A stretch of 63,813 nucleotides of DNA, the filler included, from Olpidium bornovanus S191 (Eukaryota; Fungi; Olpidiomycota), in the NCBI GenBank assembly GCA_017911155.1. It is 32 parts of 32 records of this genome, joined end to end, with 100 filler letters (N's around TTAATTAATTAA, not from the genome) between each part and the next. Parts side by side here need not be neighbours in the genome. Positions count along the whole stretch, not along the records: positions 20,393 to 26,248 come from JAEFCI010005043.1; 31 more parts are not named here. One strand, written 5' to 3'. Below the pieces are notes generated by a model. It saw only the letters and a program-made list of their open reading frames with translations, made no database searches and was not told the DNA's origin. Positions 3,640-26,379 of the stretch are shown one piece after another (positions within the stretch are counted from its first letter, which is position 1; the number at the start of each line of letters is the position of its first letter). The position numbers were made by a program, and so were the translations under genes.

Positions 3640-6332
3640 CTCGTGCGCGACGCCCCTCCACTCCTCTCGCGTGGTGCTGCTGACGCCTGTGCCGCTCACG
3701 AATTCCGCGAAGTCGGAAGCCGCCGTGCCGCCGATCGCGTTTTTTGTCCTCGAGTTGGTAGCCGCCAAAGCCACGACCTTCGGCCTCGAGGTGTCACTTT
3801 TCGCCGACTCCGTACTTGCCTTGCCGGCCCCCGCGACGAGGTTCCTCAATTTGTTCTCGCCCGCATTGATGACCGCGACCTGACCGATGCCGTTTTTTGG
3901 GACAGGCGGAGAAGCCGTGGAGCCCTGCGAAAACGAGTCGGTCTGGCAAAGCATATTGAGCCAGCTGATGCCTACAGTGGAGTCCGAGGAACACCGCGTC
4001 ATCAGGTGCCACAGGCCCACGTCGTCTGCGGAGCGCTCGCCGCGCCACTTCGAGAAGTCGCTGAGGCGCCGGTTGATGGTGTAAGCAGGATCCACGCAGG
4101 GTTGGTTCCACGCTTCTAGATTGGAGCTGTTGCTGCCGGGGCCTTTCAAACCTGCCGCGCTTGCGCCTTCATTGTAACACGCTGCGCGGATCTCGATTCG
4201 AATGAGCGACAGCGCGACGTTGAACGTGTTCTCGTAAACTCGCGAGGCCAGCGCCATGTTCGTGATGATCTGCCGCAGGGCAGCTTCGGGGCTCCCATAG
4301 GTGGCGACGTAAGAGCAGTCGGCAGCCACGCCCTAAACGAGAGCGAGCGAAAATCCAAAGTATCGGGTCGTTAATCGTCTGTGGACGGCCACTCACGCCG
4401 TCGACAAGAAACGCCTCGCACCATTCGAAGCGTTTTCGGTCTTGTCGGGCAGCCGGCGGCGGCCCTTTTCTGGAGTTTACCTGGACCGCCGACGGCGGAC
4501 ACCGAGTTCTCGATCTTCCTCTTTTGCAGCTGCAATCTCCAGAACTCCGCGGCAGCGCCGTTGACGTTCCAGTCCAGGGTCTCGGCTCCGCACGTCTTGG
4601 AGGTGGCCAGATTGCCGTCGTTGTCGCGCTTCTCAAAACGGATCTCCTTTTTGTCGTCTTCGCGATATATAATCATGGTCGCGCGGCGCGCCGAAGAACC
4701 TGTGGCGCTGGGATCGTAGACGGGAGCGTCATGTTCTTCCCTCGTCGAGGCGTAGGACTCGAGAGTTTTGATGGTATACAGGGATTTCCTGCCGCCGGTG
4801 GCTACGAAAATGACGCCCTCAAAGGTGGTATCCGCGTCCTCTTCCAACAGGTCGTGGCTGAAAGGGCCGGCGCGGAGTTAAGGGGAGCGTCATTCCTGGG
4901 CCGGCGAACGACAACAACCGCGGCGACAGGTCGCACCTATGGCTGTGCACGACGATCCTTGCCGTCCCGATTTTTTCGGCCTCAGCGTCGACCTCTGCGC
5001 ATTCCTCGTCGGCGTCAAAGCCCGCCTTCCAAGCACTTCCCCTCCTGGCATCGGCATCGAAGTCGAAAGGCAGGTCGGCGTCCGACGTGGAACCCAGTGG
5101 CCACAAGGGCGTCAGGACCGTTTGCCGGGTTGCCGCCCGGGCCCGCGTCCGCCACTCCTTTCCCCGATGAAACCGCCTATCAGAGGCGTGCTTCGACGAG
5201 AACACCGCTCCCGTGTAGACCTGTCATCAGAAAGCGGGCGAGGGATAGGTAAGCGGGGCGTTTGAGAGGCGGCCGGCTGCAAGCTTATCCGTCTCGCGGC
5301 GCGGCGGCCACACCGAAAAAACCGCCGACGCCGTTTTTTGCAACGGCGAAGAAAAACCTGCGCGGCCCACCCACGCACCCTGACGTTAATCGACAGCGAG
5401 GCGTCCTCCCTCCCGTCCAGGACAACCTTGGCGCCACTGTGAACGACGTGTTCGTGCGGCGCAAGGTGGACGTAAAACGTGGAGTTGAAGGCGGTGAACG
5501 TCAGGCGGAAGCTGTCCTTTGGCGAGAGGCCACCCTTCCTGTTCGCGCCGATTACAGTCGGCGGCAGATCGCCGTGTACGGGATGCCGCGGCAAAAGCTC
5601 GAGCGAGTACGACTCTAGGACTTCGTAACTGTGGAGCGGCGAGAGGGAATGCCTGCTGGTACGAGCTGGCGGACGGGATTCCCCCCCGGCCAGAGGAACG
5701 TAAATCCCGGCACGGGCCGCCCCGGAATTGTAATGAGACCGCCGTGGCGGAAGGCGGAAGGAAGGGGGGGGGGAGAGAGAAGAAGAGGGGAAGTGTGGGG
5801 AATTAGAGCGGGTAGGGAAAGAAGGACGGGAAGCACGAAAGCGGGAGCAGCCGACGGTCAGCGGGAAAAAACGTTTCTCGCCCCGTCCCTTGCGTGGACG
5901 GCGTACGCCAGGGGGGAAGGGGGAGAGACGAGGGTGAGGGGAGGCGGTGGGGGGGGAGGGCGCGGTGGTGAAGCGGCGGACACGGTCTATCTCCGCACCT
6001 CGGGCGGGCGTCGGAGCCGACAGCGAGGCGAGCAGCCAAAGAAGGAGGGTCCCAAAGAGCGCCGGCAGCTTGGCCCTTGGGCTCTCTCGTGGCGGCCGCC
6101 GGGCGACGGCGGCGGGGCCGGGCGAGGCCGGCCAGCGAACAGGGGGCCGGGCGACGACACGCCGGCGTGCCGAGCCGCCGGCGGGAGTGACAAGGCGGTG
6201 GCGCGAGCGGCGGCCCGCTTCGGGCGGCGGGGCCCTCGCCGTGGTCCTCTGCGCCCGCGGGCCGGTCTCGCCGGGTGCGACGCCGTTGTGGCGAGGCGAT
6301 GGCGCGGGGTCGGCAGGGCGGCGTCCGACCAT
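3640..6332 (-). CDS. Fungal ADAM/reprolysin (M12B) zinc metalloprotease, multi-exon, 3'-partial
   Basis: Hydrophobic segment LFGTLLLWLLASLSA; prodomain SFRLTFTAFNSTFYVHL and GTARIVVH; cysteine-switch-like TCGAETL; catalytic GVAADCSYV, VGLWHLMTRC, VGISWLNMLC, FVSGTGVSS, EEWRGVAHE (start of HExxH) at the last exon end. Confidence 0.88.
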
Positions 6333-21528: not shown

Positions 21529-22757
21529 CTACGCACCGGCAGCGTCCTTTATCCCCAGGATTTCCGCCAGCCGAGCGGCGTCGGCAAAGGCGGCCTTCTT
21601 CTGCCGCAGAAACTTGGCCCGGTGCCTGGTGCCGCAAACGAGATTATCAGCGGCGAGCTTTTGCGGCGAGAGATTCACAGCCGCGGCATCTAAAAACATT
21701 TGGATCCGGCCGCGCGGAGCAGAAACTCACGGGAGGCGCGGATTTGTTGTGACGGACGGCTGCGGTGACTGCGGAGGTTTCCCGGACGACTCGCTCCCTT
21801 CCTTAACGAACCCGTTGAGGCCTGCCTTCTTCGCCTTCTTCTTTTTCCCTCCCAGGGTTTCAGCCGAGTCCTCCTCGGCCTCATCCTCTCTCTCCGTCTT
21901 CCTCATTTTCTTCTTATTCTTCCGTCCGAGGTTTCCAGCAGCGTCCTCCGCCGTCTCCCCGCCCATCTCCTTCTTCTTCTCCTTCTTCTTCGTCTTCCCG
22001 GTCAGGTTCTCAGCCGAGTCTTCTTCTCCTTCATCGCCTATTTCATTCTTCTTCTTCTTCTTCTTCTTCTTCTTCTCCACATCCTTCACCGTCTTCTCCT
22101 TTTCCGTGTCTTTTTTCTTCTTTTTCTTTTTCTCTTCCTTATCCTCCTCGTTGTGCACCTCGTCGGAGGCGTCTCTTCTCCGCTTCTTCATCCTTATATC
22201 AGGCGTCGCCATCCCGGTCGACTCCCCGTCACCCGTCCCTGCCGCCGGTGACCGGTCGTTGAGGGTCTTCAATAGTGCGCTGAAGGCGTCAGTGTTGTCG
22301 AGCCACTTGTCGATGGTCTTCTTCGTGGCGCCCACGCCGAGGTTGTCGTCCTTGAGCTTCACTGCGACGTGCCTTGTGACACCTTGGCCGTCCACGCCGA
22401 GGCCCGAACCGGGCGTCCAGCCCATCTTGGCCAGCATGCGGAATCCGAAGTTGGATTGATCTTCGAAACGCGGGCATTGAAGTGGCGGCGGAAAAGGGCT
22501 TGTGAGGGAAAGGGTAGCGACGCGCCAAGAAAGCAAGCAGCAGACAAGAGCCGACGATCCCTCGCACGGTTCTCTCGCCTGAGTTGGCGGAAAAAAAAAC
22601 CGCCGAGCCAAAGGGGGGGAGGGGGGGAAGCCGCATGAGGAGAAAAGACGTGGAAAAAGAGGTCTTTGCCGTTTGGCCCTCGCTCACCGCTGCTCCAGGC
22701 CAAGTTTCGGGGATCGGCGCCTATTCTCTGCGTCTTCTTCTGTCCGGCGAGCCCCAT
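21529..22757 (-). CDS. PXR1: G-patch ribosome-biogenesis protein PXR1/Gno1/PINX1
   Basis: Exon 1 (22757-22688) MGLAGQKKTQRIGADPRNLAWSS; exon 2 from 22460 with G-patch FGFRMLAKMGWTPGSGLGVDGQG and a KKE-rich tract; last exon HRAKFLRQKKAAFADAARLAEILG...* . The donor of the last intron is not resolved. Confidence 0.92.
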
Positions 22758-23018
22758 GGCGACGACGGGGGTCCCCAGAACGTTGGTGCGGACACGAGTT
22801 TCACGTGCGAAGAATTCCGGTTTTTTTTTTTTTTTTTTTCTTTTTCCTTTTTTTTTTTTTTTTGCCTGTTTCGGAATGAGACTTGCCCCAATTCCCCCGA
22901 AACGCTTTTTTTTTTCCCAACGCCGGCTTGCCTTACCGCAACTTGTCGCTAATCACTTCCCTCTGCCAAGAAATCGGGCCAAACTGACCATTTTCTTCTT
23001 CTTTCTTCTTCCCTGCTG
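22758..23018. promoter_or_regulatory. Compact bidirectional promoter between PXR1 and the bHLH-PHD gene
   Basis: Divergent start codons only 261 bp apart, with a central poly-T tract. Confidence 0.7.
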
Positions 23019-25216
23019 ATGAATTTCTCAAACCCGCTCCATTCGGCCTTCGCCTACCCCGTAGGCCCGCCCGGGAGTGTCGTGTTCCAGGGCATTCCCG
23101 GGCAGCCGCTCCAGGACCAGCAGTACGATGACGGCTCATTCATGGCCCCGTTCTCCTCGCTGCCGTCGCCCACGTCCCCACCGCCGCTGCCCAAGGCGAC
23201 CCGGCCGCGGCCGAAACGGCCAAATCACAACGAGATGGAACGCAAGGTGCGAGTTCACCGTCTTCCGTCGAAGAAAGAAACAAAGAAAAAATTTGGCCGC
23301 GGGTCCCGCGGGTGAGGCCTAAAAACCCCCCCCCCCCCACCCGTTCCTACTCCACTTCGTCCTCCTCCCCCCGTCTCGCCTGCCGTTGGAAACGTATCTG
23401 CTTAACCACCCATTCGCCTCCCGGTTTTTAACCGGGTTGAAAATAAAAACAACAATAGCGCCGATCACGTCAAAAGGACTGCATCGGGGAGCTGAAGGAC
23501 GTCATTCCTACCCTTCAGATCGACAAGCCGTCCACCGCCCTGATCCTGCAGACTGCGAAGTTGTACATCGATTCTTTAAAAGCGAGAGTCGCGGAGATGG
23601 AGGACGAGATTTTCGCCACGCGGGAGGCGTTCGTGGAGCTGGCCGAGGGAGCCCCGGAGCAGCGCGTGGCGCTTCTGTACCGGCAGGCGGAGTCCAACGA
23701 GCGCCTGCGCCAAGAAAACGCCGACCTGAGAAGGCTGCTGGAGGAGCAGGAACAGCGGCTGTACTCCAAAACGGCGAAAGCGGACCCGCAGGACATCAAC
23801 CAACTGCCGCCGCAGCAGGAAAAGGAGGTGACGGGTGCCCGCTGTGCTTTTTTATTTTTATTTTTATTTATTTTTTTTTTTTTTTTTTTTTTTTGCTGAC
23901 ATTGCGGGGGCGGCCTGGCATATTTCGTTTTGGCGGACGAGGGTTTTTTTTTTATTTTGCTTAACTAGCCATTTGGGTCCCCGTTAAAACCGCAGGCGGA
24001 ATGGGGTGCGAACGTGCCTCTCCCGGGCATGGAACCCAGGGTCGACCTGGTGGACGCCGGCGGGGATGCTGCGCCCTTCGGCAACGCCATGTGGACGATG
24101 CCGCCCCCGATTTCCGATTTGCGGCTGCAGCAACCCCCCCTCGCGCCGTCGGCTCCGGAAAACGGCCAAAGCTTCGTTCGCTTCCAGCAAAATTCCGTGT
24201 TCAACGGGCCGCTGTTGGTGACCGCTCCCATGGGTCTACCTTCCAGCACGGCGCTTGTCCTGCCGCAGAACACGATGTATGACGAACAAATAGTATGTGT
24301 GGGCTGAGGGTAGGGTTCGTCCCCCCCCCCCCCCCAAAAAAAAAAAATCACAATGTTCTGACGTGCAAGCCGAATTTGCAGAAATCGGAAAACGCCTCTG
24401 GTGACGGCCTCGGCGGAACAGAGAACAATCAGCTGGTCATGCCCGGCCAACGCAGGAACACAACGTGAGCAAACCAAAAAAAAAAAAAAAAAAAAAAAAA
24501 ACCGGAAAGCGCTTTTCCTTAATTATTATTATTGTTATTTTTTCCTTTTCGCCCCTCGGGCTTTCTTGATACAAAAAGAAATAACCGACGCGGCCCTCTT
24601 CCCCCACCCCAATATAAAAAAATACCGGGAAACAGGCAGATCGACGGCGCGCATTTCGTCCAGCATCAGCACTCCGGTTTCTTCCCGCTCGGCGACGCCC
24701 AAGGCCCGATCGAGCCCGACCTCCGCGCGTCCCGCCACTCGGTCCCGACGCTGCTGGCCTCCGCCGCAGGTGCCGGCTCCTTCGGCGTCAGCGCGGCCCC
24801 GAAGCAGCCGTCCCTGCCCGCCCTGGACGCCCTTCCCAGCTTCTCTTTATCCTCCGGCCAGCCCCTAGACTCGATCAGCGACGTGAGCTACGGGTGGGAA
24901 GACGACGAAGTCAGGTGCAGGATCTGCCACACCGCCAATAACGGAACGTCGATGCTTCAGTGCGACGTATGTGCCATCCCCCCCTCCCTCCCGCCCGCCT
25001 GCCCCCTTCCCCCCCCCTCCCCGACTTCTCCGTTTATTTTTTTTTTTTCGCCTCGGGGGGGATTTTTTTTTGGGATGCGGGCTCTTTCTTCCACTTTTCC
25101 GTCCCCTCCCCTCCCCGATTTAGAAATGCAGGAACTGGCACCATTCGCAGTGCATCGGGCTGGACGTCGGAAAGCCGCCGGACTCGTGGGTCTGCTCTTC
25201 GTGCGCCGGCGGCTGA
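23019..25216 (+). CDS. bHLH-leucine zipper transcription factor with C-terminal PHD finger; complete 466-aa model, exons 23019-23246, 23459-23827, 23996-24292, 24382-24464, 24636-24966, 25124-25216
   Basis: All five introns are GT-AG and phase-compatible (1401 nt in total). bHLH: HNEMERK|RRSRQKDCIGELKDVIPTLQIDKPSTALILQTAKLYIDSLK. PHD: CRIC...MLQCD|KCRNWHHSQC...WVCSSC*. Confidence 0.85.
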
Positions 25217-26379
25217 CTTCGAGGGACCTCCGCGTTTGCAAGGATTCGGGCTATCGCAAAAAAACAAAAAAAAAAAAAATTGTAGGCGGCGCTCTGCGGG
25301 CTGGGGCATTTGTATTCGATACAATCGCCCAGCGGCAGTGACCATATTTATTACGCTTGGCTTTTTGGCCGCATTTTACTGTCGAAAAATACAATCCGCC
25401 ACATGCACCCCACCCCTCCCCGCTCCTCCCTTCCATGCTTCCGGCGTTGTGAAGTTGCAGAATTTTATCCGCGGGAGGGCGCCGGCTGCTACAACACCCC
25501 CACCGCTGACATACGTAACATCCGGCCCCGTCGAGCCGTCACGGGTCGGGGAGGGGGGTGGTGGAGGGGGCGAGTGTAACAGCCGGACTTTGACACCCCG
25601 CCGCGCGAACCACAAAAAGACGCAAAAATGCTCCGTAAGAGGCCAACGAAGCCGAGCGCAATTTCAGGGGAAAAGGAGAAAACAAAAAGCTACGGGCCGG
25701 TGGCACCCTCGCCGGTGGCCGACACGCCGGCGTTCGTTTGGTTTCCCAAAAAAAAAAAAAAAAAAAAAACCGCGCGAGAAAAGTTCCAGGCTTTTGCGGC
25801 GACTTGGGAAATGCGAAATTGAACCGCATATAACTGGAATGAAGAGTGTGAGCCGACTTTCACACGGAGTCCGCGAATCGCCGAATCACGGGGTGGGGGG
25901 GGGGGGGAGGGGGGGAGGGGGGGGCCAGGGTAGAAGAACGGGTGGGGCCAGGGTAGAGGAACCGAGCCAGGAGGAAGGGAAGAAGTACGCGGACGCTGGG
26001 CTCGAAGCGAGATGGAGAGCAGAGTTGGAGGACCACTTTCACGGGGTTCTGGAAAGGAATTTACCCTTGCTTTATTAACTTCCAGCCTTTTATTGTGATG
26101 GCTCCCTAGTGAGATTCTCCAGGGAAGCCCTTCGACGGGCCAGGGGCGTGTGTGTGTGTTGCCAGGAAATTGGTGGCCCTTTGGAAGGGCCGGGGGGTGC
26201 GCGCTAGAATTGGACGCCATTGAAAAAAAAAAAAAAAAAAAAAAAAAANNNNNNNNNNNNNNNNNNNNNNNNNNNNNNNNNNNNNNNNNNNNTTAATTAA
26301 TTAANNNNNNNNNNNNNNNNNNNNNNNNNNNNNNNNNNNNNNNNNNNNCATGAAATAAACGAATCAGATTTCCGCCTGC

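What the first reader, a model, noticed from the sequence alone, without database searches (positions are those of the whole stretch)
23019..25216. Complete bHLH-zipper + PHD finger fusion gene: a sequence-specific factor with its own histone reader
Seen: six phase-compatible GT-AG exons give one 466-aa ORF. It has a Max/Mlx-like basic region (HNEMERKRR, with the H-E-R residues used for CACGTG), HLH, a long coiled coil, and a terminal C4HC3 PHD finger. Known: the PHD resembles the MLL5/Set3 type (MxxCDxCxxWxH), whose Met and Trp form the H3K4me3 pocket; bHLH and PHD functions are normally on separate proteins in yeast and animal complexes. I do not know of a characterised protein with this architecture. 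Inference: it could couple E-box recognition directly to H3K4 methylation state.
Basis: partly seen in the sequence, partly recalled or inferred. Interest (0 to 1): 0.72.

Follow-up and report, generated by a model that had tools for sequence, protein, structure and literature searches.

The report
Max-like bHLH-zipper protein with PHD finger
This is a real, expressed six-exon gene of the root-infecting fungus Olpidium bornovanus that joins a Max-like E-box DNA-binding domain to a Set3/MLL5-like histone-reading PHD finger, a layout also found in a few other early-diverging fungi, never studied, and missed by the public annotation of this genome.

Summary
The six GT-AG exons (23019-25216, +) give 1401 nt, or 466 aa. 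One intron-less 1662-nt transcript contig carries all five junctions exactly as proposed. A second run adds a poly(A) end near 25412.

The piece is from Olpidium bornovanus. Its public protein model (BJ554DRAFT_7374, 446 aa) reads exons 1-3 in a wrong frame and clips the PHD, so it shows no bHLH.

- **bHLH-zipper:** it is closest to Max among solved structures.
- **PHD:** the second half is closest to yeast Set3 and human MLL5.
- **Other species:** the same layout occurs in Spizellomyces punctatus (SPPG_01121, correctly annotated), S. 'palustris', Syncephalis pseudoplumigaleata and one metagenome contig. In all of them an intron sits at the same point inside the PHD.
- **PHD-less orthologues:** syntenic chytrid orthologues lack the PHD.
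- **Literature:** no paper on this layout was found.

Most likely it is a dimeric CACGTG-binding factor whose C-terminal PHD reads methylated H3K4. That function is inferred, not shown. Verdict: real, rare, conserved and uncharacterised; a new variant of known kinds.

The parts
22971..25425 (+). Spliced, polyadenylated mRNA: about 48 nt of 5' UTR, the CDS, and about 200 nt of 3' UTR
   Evidence: the 1662-nt contig of run X1 covers this range without the five introns. Run X11 has a poly(A) loose end at 25412.
23019..23246 (+). Exon 1, residues 1-76: Pro-rich N-terminus and the first part of the basic region (KRPNHNEMERK; H70, E74)
   Evidence: joint 23246/23459, listed as 23244/23457, cut +2; tblastn match to the Spizellomyces basic region, E 3.6e-6.
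23459..23827 (+). Exon 2, residues 77-199: end of the basic region (R77, R78), helix-loop-helix, leucine zipper, and a second coiled coil (about residues 150-178, LRQENADLRRLL)
   Evidence: Pfam HLH, 28.5 bits; Max, E 2e-3; family alignment; homodimer model 0.49 against best control 0.01.
23996..24292 (+). Exon 3, residues 200-298: low-complexity, Pro-rich linker
   Evidence: No Pfam match.
24382..24464 (+). Exon 4, residues 299-326 (last codon split): linker, ending in an RRNT(T) motif (24451-24464 plus 24636) that matches RRNS/RRDS in relatives
   Evidence: record pieces 635-717 and 304-634 are contiguous across 24464/24636. for the motif.
24636..24966 (+). Exon 5, residues 326-436: linker and the first half of the PHD finger (24916-24966: C420, C423, M432, C435, D436)
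   Evidence: tblastn match to the Spizellomyces PHD, E 3.6e-4; 100% identity to the public protein over this exon.
25124..25216 (+). Exon 6, residues 437-466 plus the stop: second half of the PHD finger (25124-25204: C438, W441, H443, C446, C460, C463)
   Evidence: Pfam PHD, E 1.6e-4; Set3 1.5e-4, MLL5 6.9e-4, BPTF 1.6e-3; joint 24966/25124.
22802..22807 (.). The only CACGTG E-box in the piece. It lies 217 bp upstream of the ATG, in the roughly 160-bp gap between this gene and the divergent G-patch gene. It is a possible autoregulatory site and no more than a lead.
   Evidence: one site, and 48 of 100 shuffles have at least one somewhere; the Spizellomyces orthologue has its only CACGTG in 6.7 kb at -189.

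Best explanation
The locus is one gene of Olpidium bornovanus. It encodes a 466-aa nuclear factor of a small family found in early-diverging fungi.

The N-terminal part is a Max-like basic helix-loop-helix leucine zipper. It most likely dimerises in parallel, as a homodimer or with a related bHLH-zipper. It most likely binds the palindromic E-box CACGTG through H70, E74 and R78.

A long disordered linker of about 220 residues follows. It carries a conserved R-R-N-S/T motif. The linker tethers a C-terminal C4HC3 PHD finger of the Set3/MLL5/BPTF/DIDO class.

The PHD most likely binds the histone H3 tail with methylated K4 through its invariant Met432 and Trp441. A dimer would then carry two readers. 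It would occupy E-boxes preferentially, or more stably, next to H3K4-methylated nucleosomes at active promoters.

**Shown:** the gene model, the single mRNA, both domains, their nearest solved relatives, and conservation of the layout with a shared intron.

**Inferred:** DNA specificity, dimer state, histone specificity and the coupling of the two.
For: **Gene and mRNA**
- Exon arithmetic fits.
- One intron-less contig carries all five junctions, and a poly(A) end is seen.

**bHLH-zipper**
- Exon 2 matches Pfam HLH.
- Max is the best solved relative. The printed alignment places the orthologue's H, E and R on Max's base-contacting H28, E32 and R36. Olpidium keeps them.
- The homodimer model of exon 2 scores 0.49 against a best control of 0.01. 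The mark was reached by 21 of 30 solved homodimers and 0 of 23 solved single chains among microbial proteins. On eukaryotes it was reached by 17 of 29 homodimers and 0 of 30 single chains.
- The three runs agree in at least 93% of contacts, and partner pLDDT is at least 68. Contacts are heptad-spaced and symmetric over residues 26-62 and 72-101 of the exon.

**PHD finger**
- All eight ligands are present.
- Exon 6 hits Set3, MLL5, BPTF, EBS, ING, TAF3 and PHF2.
- The orthologue's whole finger hits DIDO1 (1.6e-9), BPTF (4e-9), Set3, PHF2, PHF8, PHF13, ING and Spp1. To my knowledge nearly all of these read H3K4me2/3.
- Met and Trp are invariant in the three aligned fingers.

**Conservation**
- The same N-terminal bHLH and C-terminal PHD occur in S. 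punctatus (HLH 5e-13, PHD 6.4e-9), S. 'palustris', Syncephalis and a JGI metagenome contig.
- All have an intron right after ML[QD]CD, phase 0 where the exon ends were mapped.
Against: - No binding data of any kind exist.
- Olpidium lacks the other aromatic cage residues of canonical H3K4me3 readers. The position of BPTF Tyr17 is Asn in Olpidium, Gln in Syncephalis and Tyr only in Spizellomyces. The position of BPTF Tyr10 is taken by the first zinc Cys. Affinity or methyl-state preference could therefore differ.
- Syntenic chytrid orthologues (Phlyctochytrium, Chytridium) do without the PHD, so it is not essential to the family's core function.
- The dimer prediction may be recalled from solved Max complexes (caveat).
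- The Olpidium bHLH is the most divergent of the family (NHNEMERKRRSRQKD; LQTAKLYI).
- The PHD could not be modelled: AlphaFold2 from a single sequence gave pLDDT 41.
Confidence: 0.6

Rival explanations
1. The gene and domains are the same, but the PHD is not a methyl-H3K4 reader. It would bind unmodified H3, another histone mark or a non-histone partner, or serve only as a protein-protein module. The fusion would then recruit a cofactor and would not sense promoter chromatin state.
For: Only two of the usual three or four cage residues are present in Olpidium. The list of solved relatives also holds fingers that, to my knowledge, do not read K4me3: KMT2D, KMT2C, BAZ2B, WSTF, ATXR5 and Jade-1. 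Acidic residues (EDDE) precede the first Cys, as in some readers of unmodified H3 (my knowledge).
Against: The Trp in C-x2-W-x-H and the Met three residues before the third Cys are invariant in the family. They mark the methyl-lysine-reading subclass. The best solved relatives of the Olpidium finger itself are Set3 and MLL5, both H3K4me2/3 readers with reduced cages (specificity from my knowledge of the Set3 and MLL5 structure papers).
Confidence: 0.25
2. It is the fungal counterpart of Max acting as a hub. It would work mainly as an obligate heterodimer partner for other bHLH-zipper proteins. The PHD would give every heterodimer a common chromatin anchor, and the protein would not act as a homodimeric factor of its own.
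For: Max is the closest solved relative. An Atlas structure search on the Atlas's own low-confidence model of the whole protein also lists a 'Protein max' cluster first (TM 0.56). Several related bHLH proteins without a PHD exist in the same fungal groups.
Against: Orthology to Max was not tested by a tree. No partner was sought in the Olpidium genome, because only this 5.9-kb piece is available. The homodimer model passes its controls, although Max also homodimerises.
Confidence: 0.12
3. The bHLH and PHD parts are two neighbouring genes, or the public 446-aa model without a bHLH is the true product, and the fusion is an artefact of hand-joining exons.
For: The public model P0001 lacks the bHLH. 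The junction 24464/24636 is missing from the joint table; the call reports rows dropped at skipped repeats, and whether this was one is not stated.
Against: The record pieces of the X1 contig are contiguous across every junction, including 24464/24636. X11 has the matching 15-letter loose end. The public model's N-terminal 280 residues come from another reading frame and match no family. The same architecture, with the same PHD intron, occurs in four other genomes or contigs.
Confidence: 0.02

Closest known systems
Max (animal bHLH-leucine zipper, partner of Myc/Mxd; PDB 1R05, 1HLO, 1AN2, 1NKP)
   Same: It is the best solved relative of the DNA-binding part. The basic-region residues for CACGTG (H-E-R), the short loop, and helix 2 running into a zipper are the same. 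A parallel symmetric dimer is predicted.
   Different: Max is about 160 aa and has no PHD or other reader domain. This family adds a second coiled coil, a roughly 220-aa disordered linker and a C-terminal PHD. Orthology to Max was not tested. Animal Myc-Max reaches H3K4me3-rich promoters through separate proteins such as WDR5 (my knowledge).
PHD fingers of yeast Set3 (PDB 5TDR, 5TDW) and human MLL5/KMT2E (PDB 4L58, 2LV9)
   Same: They are the best solved relatives of the Olpidium exon-6 half finger. They share the M-x2-C-D-x-C-x2-W-x-H core and Arg before the first Cys. From my knowledge, both read H3K4me2/3 with a reduced cage.
   Different: In Set3 and MLL5 the finger sits beside a SET domain in deacetylase-associated or methyltransferase-like proteins, not on a DNA-binding factor. 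Olpidium uses C-x2-C where BPTF and DIDO1 have C-x-C in the printed alignments. Binding was not measured.
Spizellomyces punctatus SPPG_01121 (XP_016611688.1, UniProt A0A0L0HS20; 461 aa), an uncharacterised orthologue
   Same: The order, size and domains match (HLH 29-81, PHD 413-457). So do the second coiled coil, the intron after MLDCD and a CACGTG about 190 bp upstream of the ATG.
   Different: The bHLH-zipper is only about 39% identical over 101 residues. Its finger has a Tyr at the BPTF Tyr17 position, which Olpidium lacks. It is named only 'PHD-type domain-containing protein', and no paper mentions it.
Other DNA-binding proteins with their own PHD reader: plant PHD-homeodomain and Alfin-like proteins, CFP1/Spp1 (CXXC + PHD), KDM5 (ARID + PHD), AIRE and Sp140 (SAND + PHD). 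This list is from my knowledge.
   Same: They share the principle: a DNA-recognition module and a histone H3K4-state reader on one chain.
   Different: None uses a bHLH. Searches for bHLH-PHD or HLH-PHD wording found no paper.

Membership tests
bHLH-leucine zipper, E-box class B (Max-like) | Helix-loop-helix domain recognised by the family profile above its curated cut-off | tested here: met
   exon 2 alone scores 28.5 bits against a cut-off of 20.7 (profile 12-53 of 53; the rest lies on exon 1); the orthologue scores 49.1 bits.
bHLH-leucine zipper, E-box class B (Max-like) | Basic-region His, Glu and Arg (Max H28, E32, R36) that contact CACGTG | tested here: met
   H70, E74 and R78 in NHNEMERKRR. 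They are aligned with the family. One search aligns the orthologue to Max residue by residue.
bHLH-leucine zipper, E-box class B (Max-like) | Zipper continuous with helix 2 that drives a parallel dimer | tested here: inconclusive
   the homodimer model scores 0.49 against a best control of 0.01, with symmetric heptad contacts. It is a prediction and may be recalled from solved Max dimers.
bHLH-leucine zipper, E-box class B (Max-like) | Orthology to Max, meaning it groups with Max in a tree of bHLH families | not tested
   Only ranked similarity is available (Max 1e-13, Myc 1e-7, Mad 1e-5, Ino4 2e-4, USF 6e-4). The Atlas feature search points weakly to Cbf1-like and Ino2-like clusters instead.
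bHLH-leucine zipper, E-box class B (Max-like) | Sequence-specific binding to CACGTG | not testable with these tools
   Needs EMSA, PBM or DAP-seq.
PHD finger (C4HC3 zinc finger) | Eight zinc ligands Cys4-His-Cys3 with canonical spacing | tested here: met
   C420-x2-C423-x11-C435-x2-C438-x4-H443-x2-C446-x13-C460-x2-C463. All eight are conserved in the three-species alignment.
PHD finger (C4HC3 zinc finger) | Match to the Pfam PHD profile above its cut-off | tested here: inconclusive
   The finger is split by intron 5 and was scanned exon by exon only. Exon 6 alone scores 22.1 bits against a cut-off of 24, at E 1.6e-4. The whole finger of the orthologue scores 36.1 bits.
Methyl-H3K4-reading PHD subclass (BPTF, ING, DIDO, Set3, MLL5) | Cage Trp two residues after the fourth Cys, and Met or an aromatic residue three residues before the third Cys | tested here: met
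   W441 and M432 are invariant in Olpidium, Spizellomyces and Syncephalis. In the orthologue's finger they align with BPTF W32 and Y23.
Methyl-H3K4-reading PHD subclass (BPTF, ING, DIDO, Set3, MLL5) | Full aromatic cage, with further Tyr or Trp at the positions of BPTF Y10 and Y17 | tested here: not met
   The Y17 position is Asn427 in Olpidium, Gln in Syncephalis and Tyr in Spizellomyces. The Y10 position is taken by the first zinc Cys. The result is a reduced cage, as in MLL5 (my knowledge).
Methyl-H3K4-reading PHD subclass (BPTF, ING, DIDO, Set3, MLL5) | Measured preference for H3K4me2/3 peptides | not testable with these tools
   Needs a peptide array, ITC or NMR.

The most novel reading that the evidence does not exclude
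The common ancestor of chytrids, Olpidium and the terrestrial fungi had a Max-type E-box factor that carried its own H3K4-methyl reader. This would be a one-chain coincidence detector for motif plus active-promoter chromatin. It would do in cis what animal Myc-Max achieves through separate chromatin-binding partners. It may autoregulate through a CACGTG in its own promoter. The PHD was then lost repeatedly (Phlyctochytrium, Chytridium, Kickxellomycotina), and no relative from Dikarya turned up in the searches run here.
Probability: 0.3. Interest if true: 0.65.

Novelty: new variant of a known kind. Interest (0 to 1): 0.5.

Why it matters
How sequence-specific factors choose a few sites among many identical motifs is an open question. 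For E-box factors such as Myc-Max, the choice tracks H3K4me3-marked promoters through indirect contacts. A natural protein that hard-wires a Max-like E-box domain to a methyl-H3K4-type PHD would be a simple system for testing whether such coupling sharpens site choice. The test is practical because an orthologue exists in Spizellomyces punctatus, which, to my knowledge, can be genetically transformed.

The family also adds a lineage-specific transcription-factor architecture to the poorly studied early-diverging fungi. On the practical side, the public Olpidium model (BJ554DRAFT_7374) and the Syncephalis and S. 'palustris' models are wrong or truncated. Architecture surveys based on them will therefore miss this family.

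Tried and rejected
- Those steps were run exon by exon by reference. The joined protein was used only inside local scripts for translation and alignment. A whole-protein Pfam, PDB or fold run on the Olpidium protein was therefore left out.
- **Raw RNA-seq runs:** X22 and X16 gave 0 reads on the stretch. This is no test. They share only a species label with the holders and may not contain the fungus.
- **Word-index protein searches:** a search with the ORF that contains exon 5 found only the organism's own public protein. Searches with P0017, whole and restricted to residues 20-140, found few relatives.
- **Exhaustive phmmer:** exon 2 against 1.8 billion representatives gave only 12 hits at E up to 1e-3, and none was the gene's own product. 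The family's true range is therefore undersampled.
- **PHD model:** AlphaFold2 on the Spizellomyces finger from a single sequence gave pLDDT 41, which is unusable, so no fold search was run.
- **Exon-5 half of the finger:** too short for PDB hits on its own.
- **Atlas searches:** feature scores were below 0.9, so they are leads only.
- **PHD exons near PHD-less orthologues:** regex and tblastn scans of about 4 kb on each side of the Phlyctochytrium and Chytridium genes found none.
- **Two-gene reading and the public frame:** both rejected on the transcript evidence.
Full report

All are flanked by GT..AG and are phase-compatible. They sum to 1401 nt, or 466 codons plus TGA. Exons are 58-68% G+C. 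Introns 2 and 4 are 36-39% and full of homopolymer runs.

Public run contigs settle the splicing. Run X1 holds one 1662-nt contig whose consecutive record pieces lie on 22971-23244, 23457-23825, 23994-24292, 24382-24464, 24636-24966 and 25124-25425. All five introns are therefore removed from one molecule exactly as proposed.

Run X11 has a different organism label and dates from 2012. It shows junctions 1, 2, 3 and 5. It also has a 15-letter loose end before 24636 that equals the end of exon 4, and a poly(A) loose end at 25412.

The run type is only a guess of the index. Even so, precise removal of five GT-AG introns plus a poly(A) tail is the signature of mRNA. Two raw RNA-seq runs with the same species label gave no reads at all, which is no test.

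**2. Where it comes from, and the public annotation**

A search restricted to exon 5 found one protein at 100% identity. It is 'MAG: hypothetical protein BJ554DRAFT_7374 [Olpidium bornovanus]', 446 aa, on a contig of 5856 nt, which is the length of this piece.

Comparison shows that this public model is wrong. Its first 280 or so residues come from a different reading frame across exons 1-3, so it has no bHLH. It also skips nine residues (KCRNWHHSQ) in the PHD finger.

**3. The domains**

The exons were scanned one by one.

- Exon 2 matches Pfam HLH at 28.5 bits (cut-off 20.7), profile positions 12-53. The missing first third of the domain is the basic region at the end of exon 1 (KRPNHNEMERK|RR).
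- Exon 6 matches Pfam PHD at E 1.6e-4, profile positions 18-47. The first half is at the end of exon 5.
- The finger reads C420-x2-C423-x11-C435-x2-C438-x4-H443-x2-C446-x13-C460-x2-C463, a complete C4HC3 set.

Against all solved structures, Olpidium exon 2 hits only Max (best E 2e-3). The better-conserved Spizellomyces orthologue hits Max at 1e-13. Myc follows at 1e-7, Mad at 1e-5, Ino4 at 2e-4 and USF at 6e-4.

In that alignment the family's H, E and R sit on Max H28, E32 and R36. From the Max-DNA structures, as I recall them, these residues read CACGTG. Olpidium has them as H70, E74 and R78.

A homodimer model of the exon-2 piece scored 0.49 against a best control of 0.01. The mark was reached by 21 of 30 solved homodimers and 0 of 23 solved single chains in the tool's microbial calibration. 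On eukaryotes it was reached by 17 of 29 and 0 of 30. The runs agree in at least 93% of contacts, and pLDDT is at least 68.

Contacts are symmetric and heptad-spaced along helix 2, the zipper and a second coiled coil. The tool warns that this may be recalled from solved Max dimers.

The Olpidium exon-6 half finger hits yeast Set3 (1.5e-4), human MLL5 (6.9e-4), then BPTF, EBS, ING, TAF3 and PHF2. The whole finger of the orthologue hits DIDO1 (1.6e-9), BPTF (4e-9), Set3, PHF2, PHF8, PHF13, ING2 and Spp1. To my knowledge these are overwhelmingly readers of H3K4me2/3.

**4. Relatives**

An exhaustive phmmer of exon 2 against 1.8 billion representative proteins gave only 12 hits. All that carry a name are from Chytridiomycota or Zoopagomycota.

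Four relatives have the same architecture:

- **Spizellomyces punctatus SPPG_01121** (461 aa) has HLH at 29-81 (5e-13) and PHD at 413-457 (6.4e-9).
- **S. 'palustris'** has the same protein, but its model runs into the intron after MLDCD.
- **Syncephalis pseudoplumigaleata** has a model truncated inside the finger. Its genomic locus shows the rest of the finger in a 12-nt micro-exon and a last exon: MLDCD|RCHSWFHG|RCVG|INERAIPASWICQGC.
- **A JGI metagenome contig (L007)** has the bHLH and, about 700 nt downstream, a PHD again interrupted after MLDCD.

The intron after ML[QD]CD is at the same codon boundary in all of them: Olpidium (24966/25124), S. punctatus (L005 4072/4144), S. 'palustris' (whose model reads on into it), Syncephalis and L007. 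This argues for one ancient fusion and against convergence.

The three aligned fingers keep all eight ligands and the Met and Trp. The family also shares a second coiled coil, LR-x-EN-x2-L, and an RRN[ST]/RRDS motif in the linker.

Syntenic orthologues in Phlyctochytrium arcticum, P. planicorne and Chytridium lagenaria have neighbouring Sad1/UNC and RRM genes, as in Spizellomyces. They have no PHD exon within 4 kb. The Kickxellomycotina proteins are bHLH-only as annotated.

The PHD is therefore patchy within the family. Given the shared intron, the most likely history is ancestral presence with repeated loss.

**5. Most likely mechanism**

The protein is most likely a parallel bHLH-zipper dimer that binds CACGTG. 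Through the long flexible linker, each subunit's C-terminal PHD can reach an H3 tail of a neighbouring nucleosome.

The invariant Met and Trp and the Set3/MLL5 likeness point to methylated K4. This would bias or stabilise occupancy at E-boxes in active, H3K4-methylated promoters.

The weak point is the cage. Olpidium has Asn at the position of BPTF Tyr17 and a zinc Cys at the position of Tyr10. Only a reduced Met/Trp pocket remains, so affinity and methyl-state preference are open.

My odds are as follows:

| Claim | Probability |
|---|---|
| Gene, domains and conserved architecture | about 0.95 |
| E-box binding as a dimer | about 0.8 |
| PHD reads methylated H3K4 | about 0.55-0.6 |
| The two are functionally coupled as described | about 0.5 |

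Two rivals remain. The PHD may read something else or act as a protein-interaction module (0.25). The protein may be a Max-like hub for heterodimers (0.12; this is compatible with the main reading). A two-gene artefact is essentially excluded.

**6. Comparison with what is known, and novelty**

The DNA-binding half works like Max, but orthology was not tested.

DNA-binding proteins with their own PHD are known in other families, from my knowledge: plant PHD-homeodomain and Alfin-like proteins, CFP1/Spp1, KDM5 and AIRE. The principle is therefore not new.

The bHLH + PHD combination did not turn up in full-text searches. These covered 'bHLH-PHD' and its variants, bHLH + PHD finger + fungi, Spizellomyces + bHLH + Max + Myc, and SPPG_01121.

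The combination is present in public databases as an unnamed protein of S. punctatus. The honest label is a new variant of known kinds: rare, conserved across three early-diverging fungal phyla, and uncharacterised.

**7. A side lead**

The only CACGTG in the 5.9-kb piece lies at 22802-22807. That is 217 bp upstream of the ATG, in the roughly 160-bp divergent promoter shared with the G-patch gene.

The only CACGTG in the 6.7-kb Spizellomyces locus lies 189 bp upstream of the orthologue's ATG. Syncephalis has none upstream.

This hints at autoregulation, but the statistics are weak: 48 of 100 shuffles of the piece have at least one site somewhere.

**8. Limits**

- The joined Olpidium protein was never sent to a search or fold tool, by rule.
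- The PHD could not be modelled from one sequence.
- The family's taxonomic range rests on one short-query search plus word-index searches, so it is a lower bound.

Noticed in passing
window 23019-25216, compared with public protein P0001: The public model BJ554DRAFT_7374 (446 aa) reads exons 1-3 in a wrong frame, so it has no bHLH. It also omits nine residues (KCRNWHHSQ) of the PHD. The transcript contigs contradict it.
   Followed up: yes
window 22802-22807; L005 2312-2317: The single CACGTG of the piece lies 217 bp upstream of the ATG, in the divergent promoter. The single CACGTG of the Spizellomyces locus lies 189 bp upstream of the orthologue's ATG. This may mean autoregulation, but the statistics are weak.
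   Followed up: partly
window 21727-22809 (-): The upstream neighbour is a G-patch protein (Pfam G-patch, E 6.6e-16) with a Lys/Glu-rich tail. A transcript contig covers 22688-22803/22809. Its loose end matches the start of the G-patch coding sequence, so there is an intron ending at 22687. The gene is divergent from the bHLH-PHD gene, with about 160 bp containing a long poly-T run between the two mRNA ends.
   Followed up: partly
L001 4849-5160 (Syncephalis pseudoplumigaleata KZ989643.1): The public model SYNPS1DRAFT_28560 stops inside the PHD. The genome completes the finger with a 12-nt micro-exon (5026-5037) and a last exon starting at 5102. The annotated intron just after the bHLH also looks doubtful, because tblastn reads on as ELENVNLRNALMA.
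   Followed up: partly
L002, L003, L004, L005: Sad1/UNC and RRM genes neighbour the bHLH gene in Spizellomyces, two Phlyctochytrium species and Chytridium. These are therefore orthologues, yet the last three have no PHD exon within 4 kb, so the PHD was apparently lost.
   Followed up: partly
window 24451-24464 plus 24636; relatives P0004, P0011, P0012, P0020, P0021; L006: A conserved linker motif, RRN[ST]/RRDS, has the form of a basophilic-kinase site. In Zoopagomycota and in L006 it is preceded by RKR[KR]S-x-[IV]-[DE]. Olpidium keeps only RRNTT.
   Followed up: no
L006 (Logan ERR6807737 contig, 1262 nt): This is the closest relative of Olpidium exon 2 (48% identity, E 1.5e-10). It has an intron right after NHNELERK, the same position as Olpidium intron 1. 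The contig ends before any PHD could be seen.
   Followed up: partly
L007 3884-5021 (JGI metagenome 3300047123): An environmental contig (42% G+C) encodes the same bHLH ... PHD layout with a much shorter linker (about 700 nt). It has the same intron after MLDCD and an RRM gene upstream.
   Followed up: partly
window 22825-22862, 23868-23895, 24313-24347, 24473-24500, 25040-25070: Introns and intergenic DNA carry long homopolymer runs of T, A or C between G+C-rich exons. The reads tool skipped them as repeats.
   Followed up: no
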